Source: Anolis carolinensis
Lineage: Eukaryota
NCBI RefSeq assembly: GCF_035594765.1
Contig: NC_085842.1
Location: 20,994,782 to 21,058,781, forward strand
Direction: 5' to 3'
Length of the DNA: 64,000 nt
Part shown: in pieces, positions 26,865 through 39,085 of the stretch
Layout: the number at the start of each line of letters is the position of its first letter
Position numbering within the stretch: position 1 is the first letter of the stretch
Notes under the pieces: model-generated
What the model saw: the letters and a program-made list of their open reading frames with translations, nothing else
What the model was told of the DNA's origin: nothing
Database searches by the model: none
Translations under genes and position numbers: made by a program

Positions 26865-28528
26865 CTACATGAAAGGTTTCCCCATAGTCCTCGAATTTAC
26901 TTGACTTCTGCCTACGTGCATTCTTTGATGTAAAACAAGACTCTTATATGTACCGAAACATTTCCCACACACCAAACATTCAGTGGACATTCCCCTCATG
27001 TGCATTGTTTGATGTTTCTTAAGGTTTCCACTAACACTGAAGTTCTTTCCACACTCCTTGCATTTATATGGTTTCTCCCCTGTGTGTGTTCTCACATGAA
27101 TATTAAGGTGTTCACTCCGACTAAAGGTCTTTCCACACTCCATGCACTTATAGGGCTTCTCCCCTGTGTGGGTTCTCTGATGTACTGCAAGGCTTCCTTT
27201 TTCTCTGAAATCTTTTCCGCACTCCATGCACTTATATGGTTTTTCATCTGTGTGGGTTTTTAAGTGTAAAGCAAGCACTCCCGTCCTACCAAAGGCTTTT
27301 CCGCATTTCATACACTGATATGGTCTTTCCCCAGTGTGACTTCTTTCATGCCTAATGCGGCATGCATTATCGCTGAAGCTCATTTCACACCATGTACATT
27401 TATAGGGTTTCTCCCCTGTGTGGATTCTTTTGTGTAATTTTAGATGCGACTTCTGGCTGAAACTTTTTCCACACTCCACACAATGATATGGTCTCACCCC
27501 GCTGTGGATTCTTTTGTGTGTTTTAAGGTTTCCACTCATACTGAAGCTTTTCCCACATTCTATACACTTATATGGTTTCTTCCCTGTATGGGTTCTTTTA
27601 TGTACATTAAGGTGTCCACTACTGATAAAGCACTTTCCGCACTCCATACACCTATATGGTTTCTCTCCTGTATGGATTCGCTGATGTAAAGTAAGACTTT
27701 GGCTGTCGATGAAGCTCTTCCCGCATTCCAGGCATTTATATGGCTTCTCCCCATTGTGGGTTCTTTGATGCGAAGTCAGGTTCCCTTTTCCACTGAAGTT
27801 CTTTCCACATTGCATGCATTTATACGGCTTTTCCCCAGTGTGAAATCTGAGGTGTTTACTAAAGTTTCCGCTGTTGATGAAGCTCTTTCCACATTCATGG
27901 CACTTATATGGCTTCTCCCCTGTGTGTGTTCTCCGATGCACAGTAAGGTTCCCGCTTATCCTGAAGCTTTTCCCACAGTCCAAACATTGATATGGTTTCT
28001 CCCCTGTATGCATCCTTTGATGTGTAATAAGATATCCTTTCGAAGAGAAACTCCTTCCACATTCTATGCAATGGTACGGTTTTTCCCCTGTATGGATCCT
28101 CTGATGTACAGTTAGATTTCCACTCTCGTTGAAGCTCTTCCCACATTCTGCGCATTTATAAGGTCTCTCCCCTGTGTGGGTTCTTTGATGGACGCGAAAA
28201 CTTCCACGGTTACTGAAGCTCTTTCCACACTGCATGCACTGATATAGTGCCTCCTCTGTGTGGATTTTTTCATGTTTACTTAATGCTAATTGATATTTGT
28301 ATATTTTCCCACACACCTGACACTTTCTAATCCTCCTCTTTTTGTGATTAATTGAAACCCCAAGTTCATAAACATCCAAACATTTTGAGTCAGGGGATTT
28401 CCCTGTCTTCTGTGCTTTGTTTCCTTTATACCTCTTTGGTCCCATTTCAGTCTGTAAGGTCTGTTTTCTCACTCCATGCTTCCCTGCATTTGATGACACC
28501 ATAGAATTCCCATTGTCTTTGCCATCAC
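26865..28528 (-). CDS. Gene C terminal exon: 17 C2H2 zinc fingers
   Basis: Intact ORF with canonical HTGEKPY linkers. Phase-1 acceptor ctcccttgcag|GTGATGGC, TAG at 26865-26867. Confidence 0.95.
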
Positions 28529-28873
28529 CTGCAAGGGAGGAGCAGAAACAAAACATCCCGATGTTAAATAAGGCCGTTGGATTTCACCCACTGGGAGACC
28601 AAAACGTACAAGAATGAGGGTGAAAGTAAATATATGATTTTATAAATCACTTCTATAATTTAATTAACTGAAAAGGAAGGGCTCCTTTTTCTCTCTCTGA
28701 AAGCAGACAAATCTACTTGGAACTGGGAAATTAAGAAGAGGAAATGATACCTATGTGGATGAAGCCCTTCTCAAGTTATGAGAAAAATAGCCCATTATAA
28801 ATAAAAAGAAAGCGTGATGCTCTTTTCAGTAAACCCTTTCTTAGGATTAGAGAAGATGGCACTTGACATAGTA

Positions 28874-31302
28874 CAGGCAGTCTCCAGGTTACGAACAAGT
28901 TCGGTTGGTTTGTTCTTAAGTTGAATTTGTGTAAAAGTCAGAACATGTACATTTCTTAAGTGTAACTCCAGCCACCTTTTTAAATGTTTTGGAAAGCACA
29001 AGGAAGGGTTAACATCCCTGTGACATTTGTTTTGCTGTCTTTGCCCCTGTTCAAAACATTCCACCTCAGTTTCTGTTGGATTTTGAATATTTCGGGTTGT
29101 TGCGGAAACAAGGAACGGTGATAGTTTCAGTGGATACACCTTTTCCCCATGATAACCCTTACAGGAGTAAATTTCCCTTCTTAGGGGTAGATTTCCTGTT
29201 GTCTCAAGGACAGAAGGTGAGATTAAGTCTTTCTAATGAGGATACAAACAGCAAGAAAAACCGCACAGTGGCTCTACCCCCACACCATACTAACACATCC
29301 CCCATAAAATTTGCATGGAGTTCTACTTTAAATACAACTTGGACAGATGTTTGCCTTAACATAATATTTATTTATTACCTGTGCATGTAAATACTTAGAC
29401 ATTTTCAAATATGATACAGTACAACCTTAAACTATCTTGGTAGAGAATGGGACTCATATTACAGAGTCAGAGTCAGAGTCTGCTGCCGGAGTCTGTATAT
29501 TGCAGGGGGCTTGAAAGAGGGCTTGCACACAGCTTTTCTTTTTCTCGGCATAAATAGCTTTGTAGCATTTCAGGCTGTCAGTAACCGCACAGTAAGCTTT
29601 GGCAAACCTCGCTGCATCAGGGTCTTGCTCCTCTAACTTTGCCATTCCTGCTTCAATGAGACAAAAAGCATCAGCTAATTTTTTGGTAGAAAACTTTTTC
29701 AATGTTGAAGTTTCTAGGTACGGGGTTTCTTCCGCAAATGGTATCATCTGCTGCTCTAGGTCCATAAGGTTTACTTCATTGGTTCGTTCTTTGCCCGGGG
29801 AGTCGAGCAACTCTATGATATCATCTTCACTGATGCCCAGCTGCAATTCATTGCCAATTGCAACCACAGCTTGCCTGGTTTCGGCAATTTCATCATCTAT
29901 ACTCTCAAGAAATCCTTGTTTGAATTGGGGGCACAATTTCTCCCAAGCTCCTTTCATGGTTGTCTCTTTCACTTCATCCCAAGCACCAGCAATATTTTTG
30001 ATGGCATCATGAATGCTATAGTTCTTCCACAACTCCTTTAAAGTCATCTCACCCTTTTGGGCAGCTCTGACAGCCTGGGAGAATGCCCTCTGTAAATAAT
30101 GGGCCTTAAAGGAGGCTATGATACCCTGATCCACTGGCTGCAGGAGTGATGTGGTATTGGCGGGTAGAAATGCCACCTTTACATTGGGATGAACGTCGCC
30201 TGAAATGTTTCGATGTCCTGGGGAATGATGGTCAAGGAGAAGGAGAATTTTGAAAGGAATGCTTTTGCCCAAGCAATAAAGTTCAACAGCAGGGACAAAA
30301 TGGTCTAAAAACCATTCTTGAAAGACCGCAGCAGTAACCCCAGCCTTTGGATTTGCCCTCCAAATAACAGGAAGAGATGTCTTAGTGACATTCAGAAGCG
30401 CCCTCGGATTTAGAGAGTGATGCACTACCAAAGGCTTGAGCTTTAAATCTCCAGATGCATTACTCCCAAGTAATAACGTTAGCCTGTCCTTTGATGCCTG
30501 ATGACCCGGTGCACTGTTTTCCTCTTTCAAAATGTAGATCCTCTCAAGCATTTTTTTCCACAACAAGCCAGTTTCAGCTACATTAAAAATTTGGTCTGGC
30601 AAATAACCTCCATCCTTAATAACATCTTCCAATATCTTGGTGAAACCACTTGCAGCATTTACATCAACACTCGCTGCTTCGCCTTGAACTTTAATATACT
30701 GCAAATTTGCTCTTTCTTTAAAGCGACAGAACCAACCCCTGCTTGCAGCAAATTCTTCATTGCAATTGCCTACACATGCTGTTCGAGCAGCTTTTAACTC
30801 ATTGAAAAGGCTTCGAGCCTTTTCTTGCACTAAAGGAAGACTGATAGGCAGATTACGCTGATTTTGGACTTCTATCCAAACTGTCAACAGCCTTTCCATC
30901 TCGATAATTAAACCACTGCGCTGCTTGGTAATAATCGTAGCATTCATTGGGGCATGGCTTTTCACATGCTCCATTATTCTAGCTTTGTCTTTTAAAATGG
31001 TTGCAATCGTTGAACGACTGTAACCAAATGCTTTGCCAATGGATGACGGAGTTTCGCCTCTCTCTGCTCTCTTTATTATTTCTACTTTATGTCCCATGGT
31101 GATGGTTTTTCTTTTCTTGGCTGGAGTACCAGCAGTTCCATCAGATTTGTATTTCGGAGGCATTGTTGCAGGGTGAAAACAACAAGTGCGGCAGCGTTAC
31201 AATTACTGGAACACTATGCAGTACACTTTGGATGTGGTCTGGTGCCCGTTCGTAAGTACGAGTCGCACGCAAGTCGGATGTTCGTAACTCAGGGACTGCC
31301 TG
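28874..31302 (-). mobile_element. Full-length Tigger/pogo DNA transposon (2429 bp) with degenerate TIRs
   Basis: TA-CAGGCAGTCTCCAGGTTACGAACA at 28874 versus CAGGCAGTCCCTGAGTTACGAACA on the minus strand at 31302 (20/24 identical). The right TSD is altered. The TIRs enclose the transposase ORF. Confidence 0.72.
29454..31163 (-). CDS. Tigger transposase-derived protein (TIGD1-like; CENP-B-type HTH domains plus DDE_1), probably domesticated
   Basis: 569 aa without stops or frameshifts. Motifs KKRKTITMGHKVEII, FAASRGWF.RFK.R, QIFNVAETGL, KDRLTLLLGSNASGD.KLKP, LPANTTSLLQPVDQG. ATG has A at -3, and AATAAA lies about 80 nt after the stop. Confidence 0.9.
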   Translation of the reverse strand: MPPKYKSDGTAGTPAKKRKTITMGHKVEIIKRAERGETPSSIGKAFGYSRSTIATILKDKARIMEHVKSHAPMNATIITKQRSGLIIEMERLLTVWIEVQNQRNLPISLPLVQEKARSLFNELKAARTACVGNCNEEFAASRGWFCRFKERANLQYIKVQGEAASVDVNAASGFTKILEDVIKDGGYLPDQIFNVAETGLLWKKMLERIYILKEENSAPGHQASKDRLTLLLGSNASGDLKLKPLVVHHSLNPRALLNVTKTSLPVIWRANPKAGVTAAVFQEWFLDHFVPAVELYCLGKSIPFKILLLLDHHSPGHRNISGDVHPNVKVAFLPANTTSLLQPVDQGIIASFKAHYLQRAFSQAVRAAQKGEMTLKELWKNYSIHDAIKNIAGAWDEVKETTMKGAWEKLCPQFKQGFLESIDDEIAETRQAVVAIGNELQLGISEDDIIELLDSPGKERTNEVNLMDLEQQMIPFAEETPYLETSTLKKFSTKKLADAFCLIEAGMAKLEEQDPDAARFAKAYCAVTDSLKCYKAIYAEKKKSCVQALFQAPCNIQTPAADSDSDSVI

Positions 31303-38508: not shown

Positions 38509-38779
38509 ATACTCATGAGAGGTAAACAACAATCAGAGGTAAACAACAACACAATTTTCCTATTTAAAAGTCAAAACATTACATATATATATATAAAAAC
38601 TTTATGCAAATCCAACTGCATAAAAGCCATCTCTCAATAGAAAAAGGGGGGCGGGTTACAAGGAAGGGCCTGCAACAAAAAGGATCCTGCAAACAAAACC
38701 TGACAGATGTTTTGTATAGGTCATCTTAAAACAGACCCCACCCAGGAAGCCAGAGTAAAGTGGAGGGCAGTGTGTGAGA

Positions 38780-39085
38780 TGGGCCCCATCCGAAGCCCCA
38801 CAACCCAAAGCCTGCCTGCCTCCCTCGCCCACCCCGACAGCCCTCACCTCTTTGTGCTCCCCTCCCCAGGCACCCGCCGCCCGCGCTTCCTCTTCCTCCT
38901 CCTCCTCACTGAGCCCGACCGGATGCTGGCCTGTCCGGAAGTCTCGCAGCACTTCCTGCCTTTCTAGGGACTGGCGCGCGGCTGGTTTAACCCTTGCAGG
39001 GCTCGCGCCTCAGCCTCGCTCTGGCCCAGGCAACGCCTTCCTACTCAGCCTCAAGCATCCGGCCGGTTCGGCGACTGAAGAGCTC
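38780..39085 (-). promoter_or_regulatory. CpG-island promoter and non-coding first exon, likely of gene C and the Tigger-derived ORF
   Basis: Sharp GC/CpG peak, ETS/GABP motif CCGGAAGT at 38935-38942, minus-strand donor GAG|GTGAGG after 38848. Confidence 0.65.

What the first reader, a model, noticed from the sequence alone, without database searches (positions are those of the whole stretch)
26865..38960. One transcription unit with two alternative terminal exons: a Tigger transposase-derived ORF or a 17-zinc-finger array
Seen on the minus strand, in order: CpG island with a donor (38848); KRAB-derived exon (32915-32801); a strong acceptor tttctatttctctgcag|GTGG (exon starts 31329, 27 nt outside the Tigger TIR); 166 nt without any ATG; the intact 569-aa Tigger ORF; AATAAA (29367-29376); then a second acceptor (28528) and the ZF exon. 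Splicing 32801 to 28528 puts ATG-ATG of the KRAB remnant in frame with all 17 fingers (MMKNCGSMTPLGDGKDN...). Splicing 32801 to 31329 turns the same ATGs into a 15-codon uORF ending TAG, ahead of the transposase ATG. Established: transposases are captured as alternative 3' exons in vertebrates (CSB-PGBD3, KRAB-transposase fusions). Inference: here the transposase uses a KRAB-ZNF promoter and 5' exons without being fused, giving a splice switch between two unrelated DNA-binding proteins.
Basis: partly seen in the sequence, partly recalled or inferred. Interest (0 to 1): 0.85.

Follow-up and report, generated by a model that had tools for sequence, protein, structure and literature searches.

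The report
Anole gene: zinc-finger or tamed transposase
In anole lizards one gene splices a shared exon either to a tamed, probably cut-dead transposon protein or to a 17-finger DNA-binding protein; both spliced RNAs exist and both proteins are kept by selection, an undescribed lizard version of an arrangement known from a few mammalian genes.

Summary
Confirmed. The window is Anolis carolinensis. The KRAB-remnant exon (32915-32801) is spliced to the Tigger exon (31329) in RNA-like runs from three studies and to the zinc-finger exon (28528) in two; neither joint is in a DNA run. A. sagrei has the same layout: same acceptors, same KRAB frameshift, same uORF stop, both ORFs intact, dN/dS 0.13 (Tigger) and 0.24 (fingers). 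The Tigger ORF is single-copy at 95% likeness and has lost its first catalytic Asp (D196A) in both species while its DNA-binding domains are kept: a domesticated transposase. No frame fuses it to KRAB. The architecture is known (CSB-PGBD3 and KRABINER fused; ZBED1/DHRSX and ZBED6/ZC3H11A unfused), and NCBI already calls both CDSs. Unusual here: the host is a KRAB-dead ZNF gene, the acceptor lies outside the transposon, and the fingers' start codon becomes a uORF on the transposase RNA. I found no paper on it; the scan noted the same ORF only on this window.

The parts
38848..39090 (-). CpG-island promoter and putative exon 1 (last base 38848, donor GTGAGG)
   Evidence: CpG o/e 0.71, GC 0.67; exon end and donor conserved in A. 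sagrei; not tested on reads; start of exon not determined
36577..36604 (-). extra 5' exon end spliced to the KRAB-remnant exon (5' boundary uncertain)
   Evidence: loose end at 32918 in run X5 matches this place; donor conserved in A. sagrei
33887..33986 (-). repeat-derived cassette 5' exon with five ATGs, not found in A. sagrei
   Evidence: loose end at 32917 in run X4; coordinates; no sagrei match
32801..32915 (-). KRAB-A remnant exon, frameshifted; carries ATGs 32834, 32831, 32813 that start the finger protein or the uORF
   Evidence: 1-nt frameshift shared with A. sagrei; 4-nt indel polymorphism behind 32855
31303..31329 (-). host-side start of the Tigger exon, outside the TIR; contains the uORF stop (ends 31316)
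   Evidence: junction 32801>31329 in three studies; acceptor and first 23 exon bases identical in A. sagrei
28874..31302 (-). full-length Tigger (pogo) element, 2429 bp, TIRs 31279-31302 and 28874-28897
   Evidence: right flank TA, left flank CA
29454..31163 (-). 569-aa domesticated Tigger transposase ORF (CENP-B_N, HTH_Tnp_Tc5, DDE_1; D196A)
   Evidence: single-copy depth in DNA run
29367..29376 (-). poly(A) signal of the Tigger isoform
   Evidence: AATAAA kept in A. sagrei; X7 contig ends at 29355, X4 contig runs on to 29238
26865..28528 (-). terminal zinc-finger exon, spacer plus 17 C2H2 fingers
   Evidence: junction 32801>28528 in X4 and X5; dN/dS 0.24
26223..26602 (+). MITE of the same Tigger family just downstream of the finger stop codon (candidate binding site)
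   Evidence: TIR matches at both ends, 0 expected by chance; internal similarity to the element's right arm
42745..42915 (+). second, partial MITE of the same family about 3.9 kb upstream of the promoter

Best explanation
A Tigger DNA transposon inserted into the last intron of a KRAB-zinc-finger gene before A. carolinensis and A. sagrei split. A 3' splice site in the host DNA 27 nt outside the left TIR and a poly(A) signal inside the element turned it into an alternative terminal exon (shown). Splicing from the KRAB-remnant donor to that site gives an mRNA in which the remnant's ATGs open a 14-15 codon uORF and the transposase is made as a stand-alone protein, most likely by reinitiation across the 152-nt ATG-free spacer or by leaky scanning (inferred). 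Skipping the element gives a KRAB-less 17-finger protein from the same ATGs (junction shown, protein inferred). The transposase lost its first catalytic Asp and other catalytic-domain motifs before the split but kept its paired HTH domains and has since been under purifying selection (shown), so it most likely works as a DNA-binding protein that recognises the TIRs of the very abundant MITEs of its own family, as a chromatin or transcription regulator or a damper of that family (inferred, about 55%). The two products are linked by sharing one promoter, and compete for each transcript; a functional link between them is not shown.
For: Junctions in RNA-like contigs of 3 and 2 studies, absent from DNA run; introns nearly uncovered. 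Same arrangement, acceptors, uORF stop, poly(A) signal in A. sagrei. Tigger dN/dS 0.13 (p 3e-34), fingers 0.24; differences by codon position 33/23/110; about 54 aa changes observed against 113 +/- 5 under a neutral simulation; about 18 frameshifting indels expected, none seen. D196A, P206L, N313H, A314S, P318R shared by both anoles; 30 of 31 family-conserved DNA-binding positions kept. ORF depth 8 (= flanks) against 4,500-5,000 on the right arm in DNA run. Two or three in-frame stops in the leader rule out fusion in both species. NCBI calls both CDSs in both species.
Against: Run type is a guess by the tool (though contigs follow exons). No protein-level data; the uORF ATGs have adequate to strong context, which should reduce transposase output. 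The excess of decay in the catalytic over the DNA-binding domain is not significant (12/100 against 1/31, p 0.30), and the catalytic domain is as constrained today as the DNA-binding one (dN/dS 0.11 against 0.12). dS (0.35) exceeds nearby non-coding divergence (0.10-0.13), partly from a GC3 rise in sagrei, so the ratio may be understated, though the codon-position and indel tests do not depend on it. No binding data.
Confidence: 0.8

Rival explanations
1. Decayed KRAB-Tigger fusion: the locus began as a KRABINER-like fusion isoform and later lost the KRAB frame, leaving both products KRAB-less.
For: Same place and splice logic as KRABINER and KTIGD1 (10.1101/2020.05.07.082677). The leader is open in the Tigger frame for 41 codons in A. 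sagrei.
Against: An intact KRAB exon ends in phase 1 and the 166-nt leader (same length in both species) would put the transposase out of frame; two stops just before the ATG are shared by both species. No outgroup with intact KRAB was found.
Confidence: 0.1
2. The Tigger exon matters mainly as a poison or attenuator exon that diverts transcripts from the finger protein; its ORF is a passenger.
For: The uORF captures the fingers' start codon; the acceptor region is identical in both species; one run shows only the Tigger form.
Against: An attenuator needs no intact ORF; the ORF shows strong codon-level selection and no frameshift over 1.7 kb.
Confidence: 0.05
3. Selfish, still-active or recently active master copy that uses the host promoter as an exon trap; selection reflects transposition, not host function.
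For: Full-length element with both TIRs and a huge MITE family.
Against: Fixed at the orthologous site in two species, single-copy ORF, first catalytic Asp lost in both, left TA target changed. Selection measured between orthologous copies cannot come from transposition of other copies.
Confidence: 0.05

Closest known systems
CSB-PGBD3 (PMC2268245)
   Same: Transposon in a host intron acting as an alternative 3' terminal exon with its own poly(A) signal; catalytic Asp changed; cognate MITE family (MER85) as candidate targets.
   Different: PGBD3 is fused in frame to host exons and its splice site is inside the element; here the product is unfused and the acceptor lies outside the TIR. piggyBac against Tigger.
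KRABINER / ZNF112 and KTIGD1 (10.1101/2020.05.07.082677)
   Same: Tc1/mariner-type element in the last intron of a KRAB-ZNF gene, alternative splicing keeps both the parental finger transcript and the transposase transcript.
   Different: Those are KRAB-transposase fusion repressors. Here KRAB is frameshifted in both isoforms and neither product carries it. That survey's table lists only fusions for Anolis; I could not map its gene numbers to this place, but the 569-aa ORF is annotated stand-alone.
ZBED1 / DHRSX and other promoter-sharing pairs such as PEG3 / ZIM2 (PMC2568002, Table 1)
   Same: A transposase-derived gene shares 5' exons and promoter with a host gene, with no shared coding sequence.
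   Different: hAT-derived and ancient; host is an enzyme gene. Here the host is a ZNF gene, the shared exon holds the host's start codon, and the event appears limited to Anolis.
ZBED6 / ZC3H11A (PMC5834713)
   Same: Stand-alone domesticated transposase in an intron of a zinc-finger protein gene, expressed from the host transcript, acting as a DNA-binding regulator.
   Different: ZBED6 is expressed by intron retention, not by an alternative acceptor and poly(A) site.
Domesticated pogo/Tigger genes TIGD2-7, JRK, JRKL, CENPB (PMC7386202)
   Same: CENP-B_N + HTH_Tnp_Tc5 + DDE_1 architecture, stationary, Ka/Ks below 1.
   Different: Independent, much younger event from a TIGD1-like clade, still inside both TIRs. 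That paper set TIGD1-like sequences aside as pseudogene-like; this one is under selection.

Membership tests
Tigger (pogo) transposase-derived | CENP-B_N + HTH_Tnp_Tc5 + DDE_1 domains | tested here: met
   fold matches Mos1 and CENP-B
Tigger (pogo) transposase-derived | about 24-bp TIRs starting CAG and TA target duplication | tested here: inconclusive
   TIRs present; right flank TA, left flank CA in both species
Active Tigger transposon | intact DD(29-36)D triad and multiple similar copies | tested here: not met
   D196A in both anoles, D311 and D345 kept; ORF single-copy at 95% likeness
Domesticated transposase gene | orthologous fixed position in more than one species | tested here: met
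   A. sagrei L003 collinear; only two species seen
Domesticated transposase gene | purifying selection on the ORF | tested here: met
Domesticated transposase gene | transcribed from host regulatory sequence | tested here: met
   spliced to upstream host exon in three studies
Domesticated transposase gene | protein made and with a host function | not testable with these tools
   needs Ribo-seq, proteomics, ChIP, knockout
Host-transposase fusion (KTIGD/KRABINER type) | host domain fused in frame to the transposase | tested here: not met
   stops in the leader in both species and both alleles
Host-transposase fusion (KTIGD/KRABINER type) | splice acceptor supplied by the transposon | tested here: not met
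   acceptor lies 27 nt outside the TIR
KRAB zinc-finger protein | intact KRAB-A box in frame with the fingers | tested here: not met
   frameshift shared by both species; only the last 10-12 codons are in frame; no SCAN remnant found upstream
Promoter-sharing gene pair (ZBED1/DHRSX type) | shared 5' exon, unrelated coding sequences | tested here: met
   shared exon 32915-32801 on both junctions
Promoter-sharing gene pair (ZBED1/DHRSX type) | same transcription start for both RNAs | not tested
   reads were laid on 28300-33000 only; needs long reads or 5'-end data

The most novel reading that the evidence does not exclude
The splice choice is a regulated, functionally coupled switch: one locus makes either a finger protein or a TIR-binding ex-transposase, the reuse of the fingers' start codon as a uORF sets the transposase dose, and the ex-transposase binds the MITEs flanking its own gene (26223-26602, 42745-42915) and hundreds more, forming an anole-specific feedback network.
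Probability: 0.15. Interest if true: 0.8.

Novelty: new variant of a known kind. Interest (0 to 1): 0.58.

Why it matters
It is a young, well-preserved case of transposase domestication without fusion, caught with both TIRs, the host transcript and the target MITE family still in place. Surveys that look for fusion proteins miss this route, and a pogo survey discarded TIGD1-like copies as pseudogene-like, so such genes are probably undercounted. It shows that a ZNF gene can lend promoter and 5' exons to a transposase even when the KRAB frame is lost, and gives a testable system (TIR binding, uORF control, isoform ratio by tissue) in a lizard with genome editing.

Tried and rejected
Fusion in any frame or allele: rejected. 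Processed copy explaining the junctions: not seen in the DNA run. SCAN exon upstream: none found in either species. Orthologue of the finger protein outside Anolis: spacer search blank, whole-exon search gave only 36-63% identity hits with unrelated finger signatures, HMM search dominated by generic fingers; these blanks do not prove absence, and even the two anole proteins were not returned. Orthologue of the Tigger ORF outside Anolis: next hits are about 72-79% turtle and frog copies with the catalytic Asp; L001 has a different 5' context. Origin of the 27-nt host segment: no match elsewhere in the window. Literature: no paper found on this locus; library lacks most subscription papers. Compliance: locus L002 spans the N stretch 39631-39820; I did not read or use its letters, only its gene table. 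Database searches were run exon by exon by reference; the joined spliced model was not searched, only translated in local scripts to check frames, and one joined empty-site flank was compared with the window locally. Human and ape proteins appeared in hit lists but were left out of alignments; no contig taken for human was fetched.
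Full report
Source. The Tigger ORF is on record in GCA_035594765.1, record CM069368.1, where two overlapping CDSs are called: a 565-residue one that starts at window 32834 and ends at 26865, and the 569-residue transposase. 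The best relative is Anolis sagrei at 91%; with the squamate SCAN-ZNF neighbourhood and my own knowledge of that accession this makes the window Anolis carolinensis.

Observation. The element spans 31302-28874 with 24-nt TIRs; the right flank is TA, the left CA. The 115-nt exon reads as KRAB-A in one frame for its first half and in another for its last 11 codons. Joined to 28528 the ATG at 32834 gives 565 residues with 17 fingers; joined to 31329 it gives 15 codons, stop ending 31316, then 152 nt without ATG.

RNA. No run was on record as RNA, but runs with small assemblies held about 0.6 of the words of 29300-33000, the share the predicted exons take. Laid on 28300-33000, three such runs from three studies carry the joint 32801>31329 (depth 17.8, 35.8, 19.8) and two carry 32801>28528 (11.3, 17.2), both with GT..AG ends; introns are nearly empty. 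A genome-sized run covers the stretch evenly and has neither joint. In X7 one contig runs unbranched from the KRAB exon through the Tigger ORF to 29355, 12 nt past the poly(A) signal, and the finger exon is not seen; contigs show presence only, so this is a hint of sample-dependent use, not proof. X4's contig runs on to 29238, so the 3' end is not unique or includes unprocessed RNA. Loose ends show further upstream exons ending at 33887 and 36577. Exon 1 was outside the laid stretch.

Conservation. A. sagrei is collinear from the CpG island to the finger stop. Exon-1 donor, KRAB exon, both acceptors, the uORF stop, the 166-nt leader length and an AATAAA are kept; the Tigger acceptor region is identical over about 55 nt. 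The 1-nt KRAB frameshift is shared, so KRAB was dead before the split; the reference lacks a further 4 nt that sagrei and two of the RNA runs have, which does not restore the frame. dN/dS is 0.13 for the transposase and 0.24 for the finger exon. Because dS exceeds nearby non-coding divergence, I also tested without it: differences fall 33/23/110 on codon positions, a neutral simulation with the local substitution spectrum expects 113 +/- 5 changed residues against about 54 seen, and about 18 frameshifting indels against none. Finger contact residues are largely the same in both species.

The protein. CENP-B_N, HTH_Tnp_Tc5 and DDE_1; the model is confident in both HTH domains and the catalytic core and matches Mos1 and CENP-B. 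Both anoles share D196A at the first catalytic Asp and eleven more departures from family-conserved catalytic-domain positions, against one of 31 in the DNA-binding part; the contrast is not significant (p 0.30), and the catalytic domain is still constrained, perhaps for dimerisation or partner binding (inference). In the DNA run the ORF has single-copy depth while the element's ends are hundreds-fold deeper, and two MITEs of the family flank the gene.

Fusion excluded. In neither species nor allele does a KRAB frame reach the transposase: two stops just upstream of the ATG are shared, and carolinensis has a third.

Mechanism. Shown: alternative acceptors from one donor, selection on both ORFs, loss of the catalytic Asp, no fusion. 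Inferred: shared CpG-island promoter (likely), translation by reinitiation after a short uORF (established behaviour of short uORFs with a long spacer, my own knowledge; not tested here), binding to TIRs and MITEs (by analogy with PGBD3/MER85, PMC2268245), any regulation of the ratio.

Comparison. Capture as an alternative 3' exon is known for CSB-PGBD3 and for KRABINER in ZNF112; those are fusions and use splice sites from the element. Unfused sharing of 5' exons is listed for ZBED1/DHRSX among 24 human pairs (PMC2568002), and ZBED6 is expressed from the ZC3H11A transcript (PMC5834713). This locus combines the KRABINER position with the ZBED1 logic. It works like those systems; it is not a member of the KRAB-transposase fusion class. 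Stand-alone Tigger domestications exist (PMC7386202), but that study set TIGD1-like copies aside.

Verdict. Real, expressed and conserved; a new variant of a known kind; no description found. Interest 0.58. The order of KRAB loss and insertion, translation and targets remain open.

Noticed in passing
window 29454-31163 against L001 and L004: The element is 85% identical in DNA to a Logan contig whose protein is close to a Pelodiscus turtle copy, and 81% to bullfrog copies; fourfold-site divergence to them (0.245, 0.27) is about that between the two anoles (0.26). This suggests horizontal transfer of this Tigger family among frogs, turtles and lizards shortly before the anole split.
   Followed up: partly
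window 32855: 4-nt indel polymorphism in the KRAB remnant within A. carolinensis; the reference has the shorter allele, A. sagrei and runs X4, X7 the longer.
   Followed up: yes
window 26223-26602 and 42745-42915: MITEs of the same Tigger family on both sides of the gene; the first may lie in the 3' UTR of the finger isoform.
   Followed up: partly
L003 about 11889-13112: A. sagrei has a 1.2-kb insertion inside the Tigger right arm, downstream of the poly(A) signal; its finger ORF is 23 residues longer at the C-terminus.
   Followed up: no
P0008 (Varanus komodoensis), P0070, P0072, P0079: Related Tigger transposases annotated as fusions in other lizards: RING plus Myb/SANT-like in Varanus; KRAB and/or C2H2 fingers in Tiliqua, Hemicordylus and a Logan contig. 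Separate loci, not examined.
   Followed up: no
window 1486-2043, 12763-12927, 16657-17187, 10303-12252, 49771-50679, 56514-57362: Neighbouring SCAN, KRAB and C2H2 exons: the locus sits in a squamate SCAN/KRAB-ZNF cluster, all on the minus strand; a degraded SCAN remnant lies on the plus strand at about 4592-4834.
   Followed up: partly
window 39090-40000: GATA/GACA-type satellite directly upstream of the CpG island, with an N gap at 39631-39820 (left unfilled).
   Followed up: no
window 29454-31163 and L003 10001-11707: Third-position GC of the ORF is 0.40 in carolinensis and 0.50 in sagrei, and synonymous divergence is about three times the nearby non-coding divergence; unexplained.
   Followed up: partly
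window 57699-60819: Two ORFs resembling the C-terminal end of an R4/Rex-type non-LTR retrotransposon (judged from the translation only).
   Followed up: no
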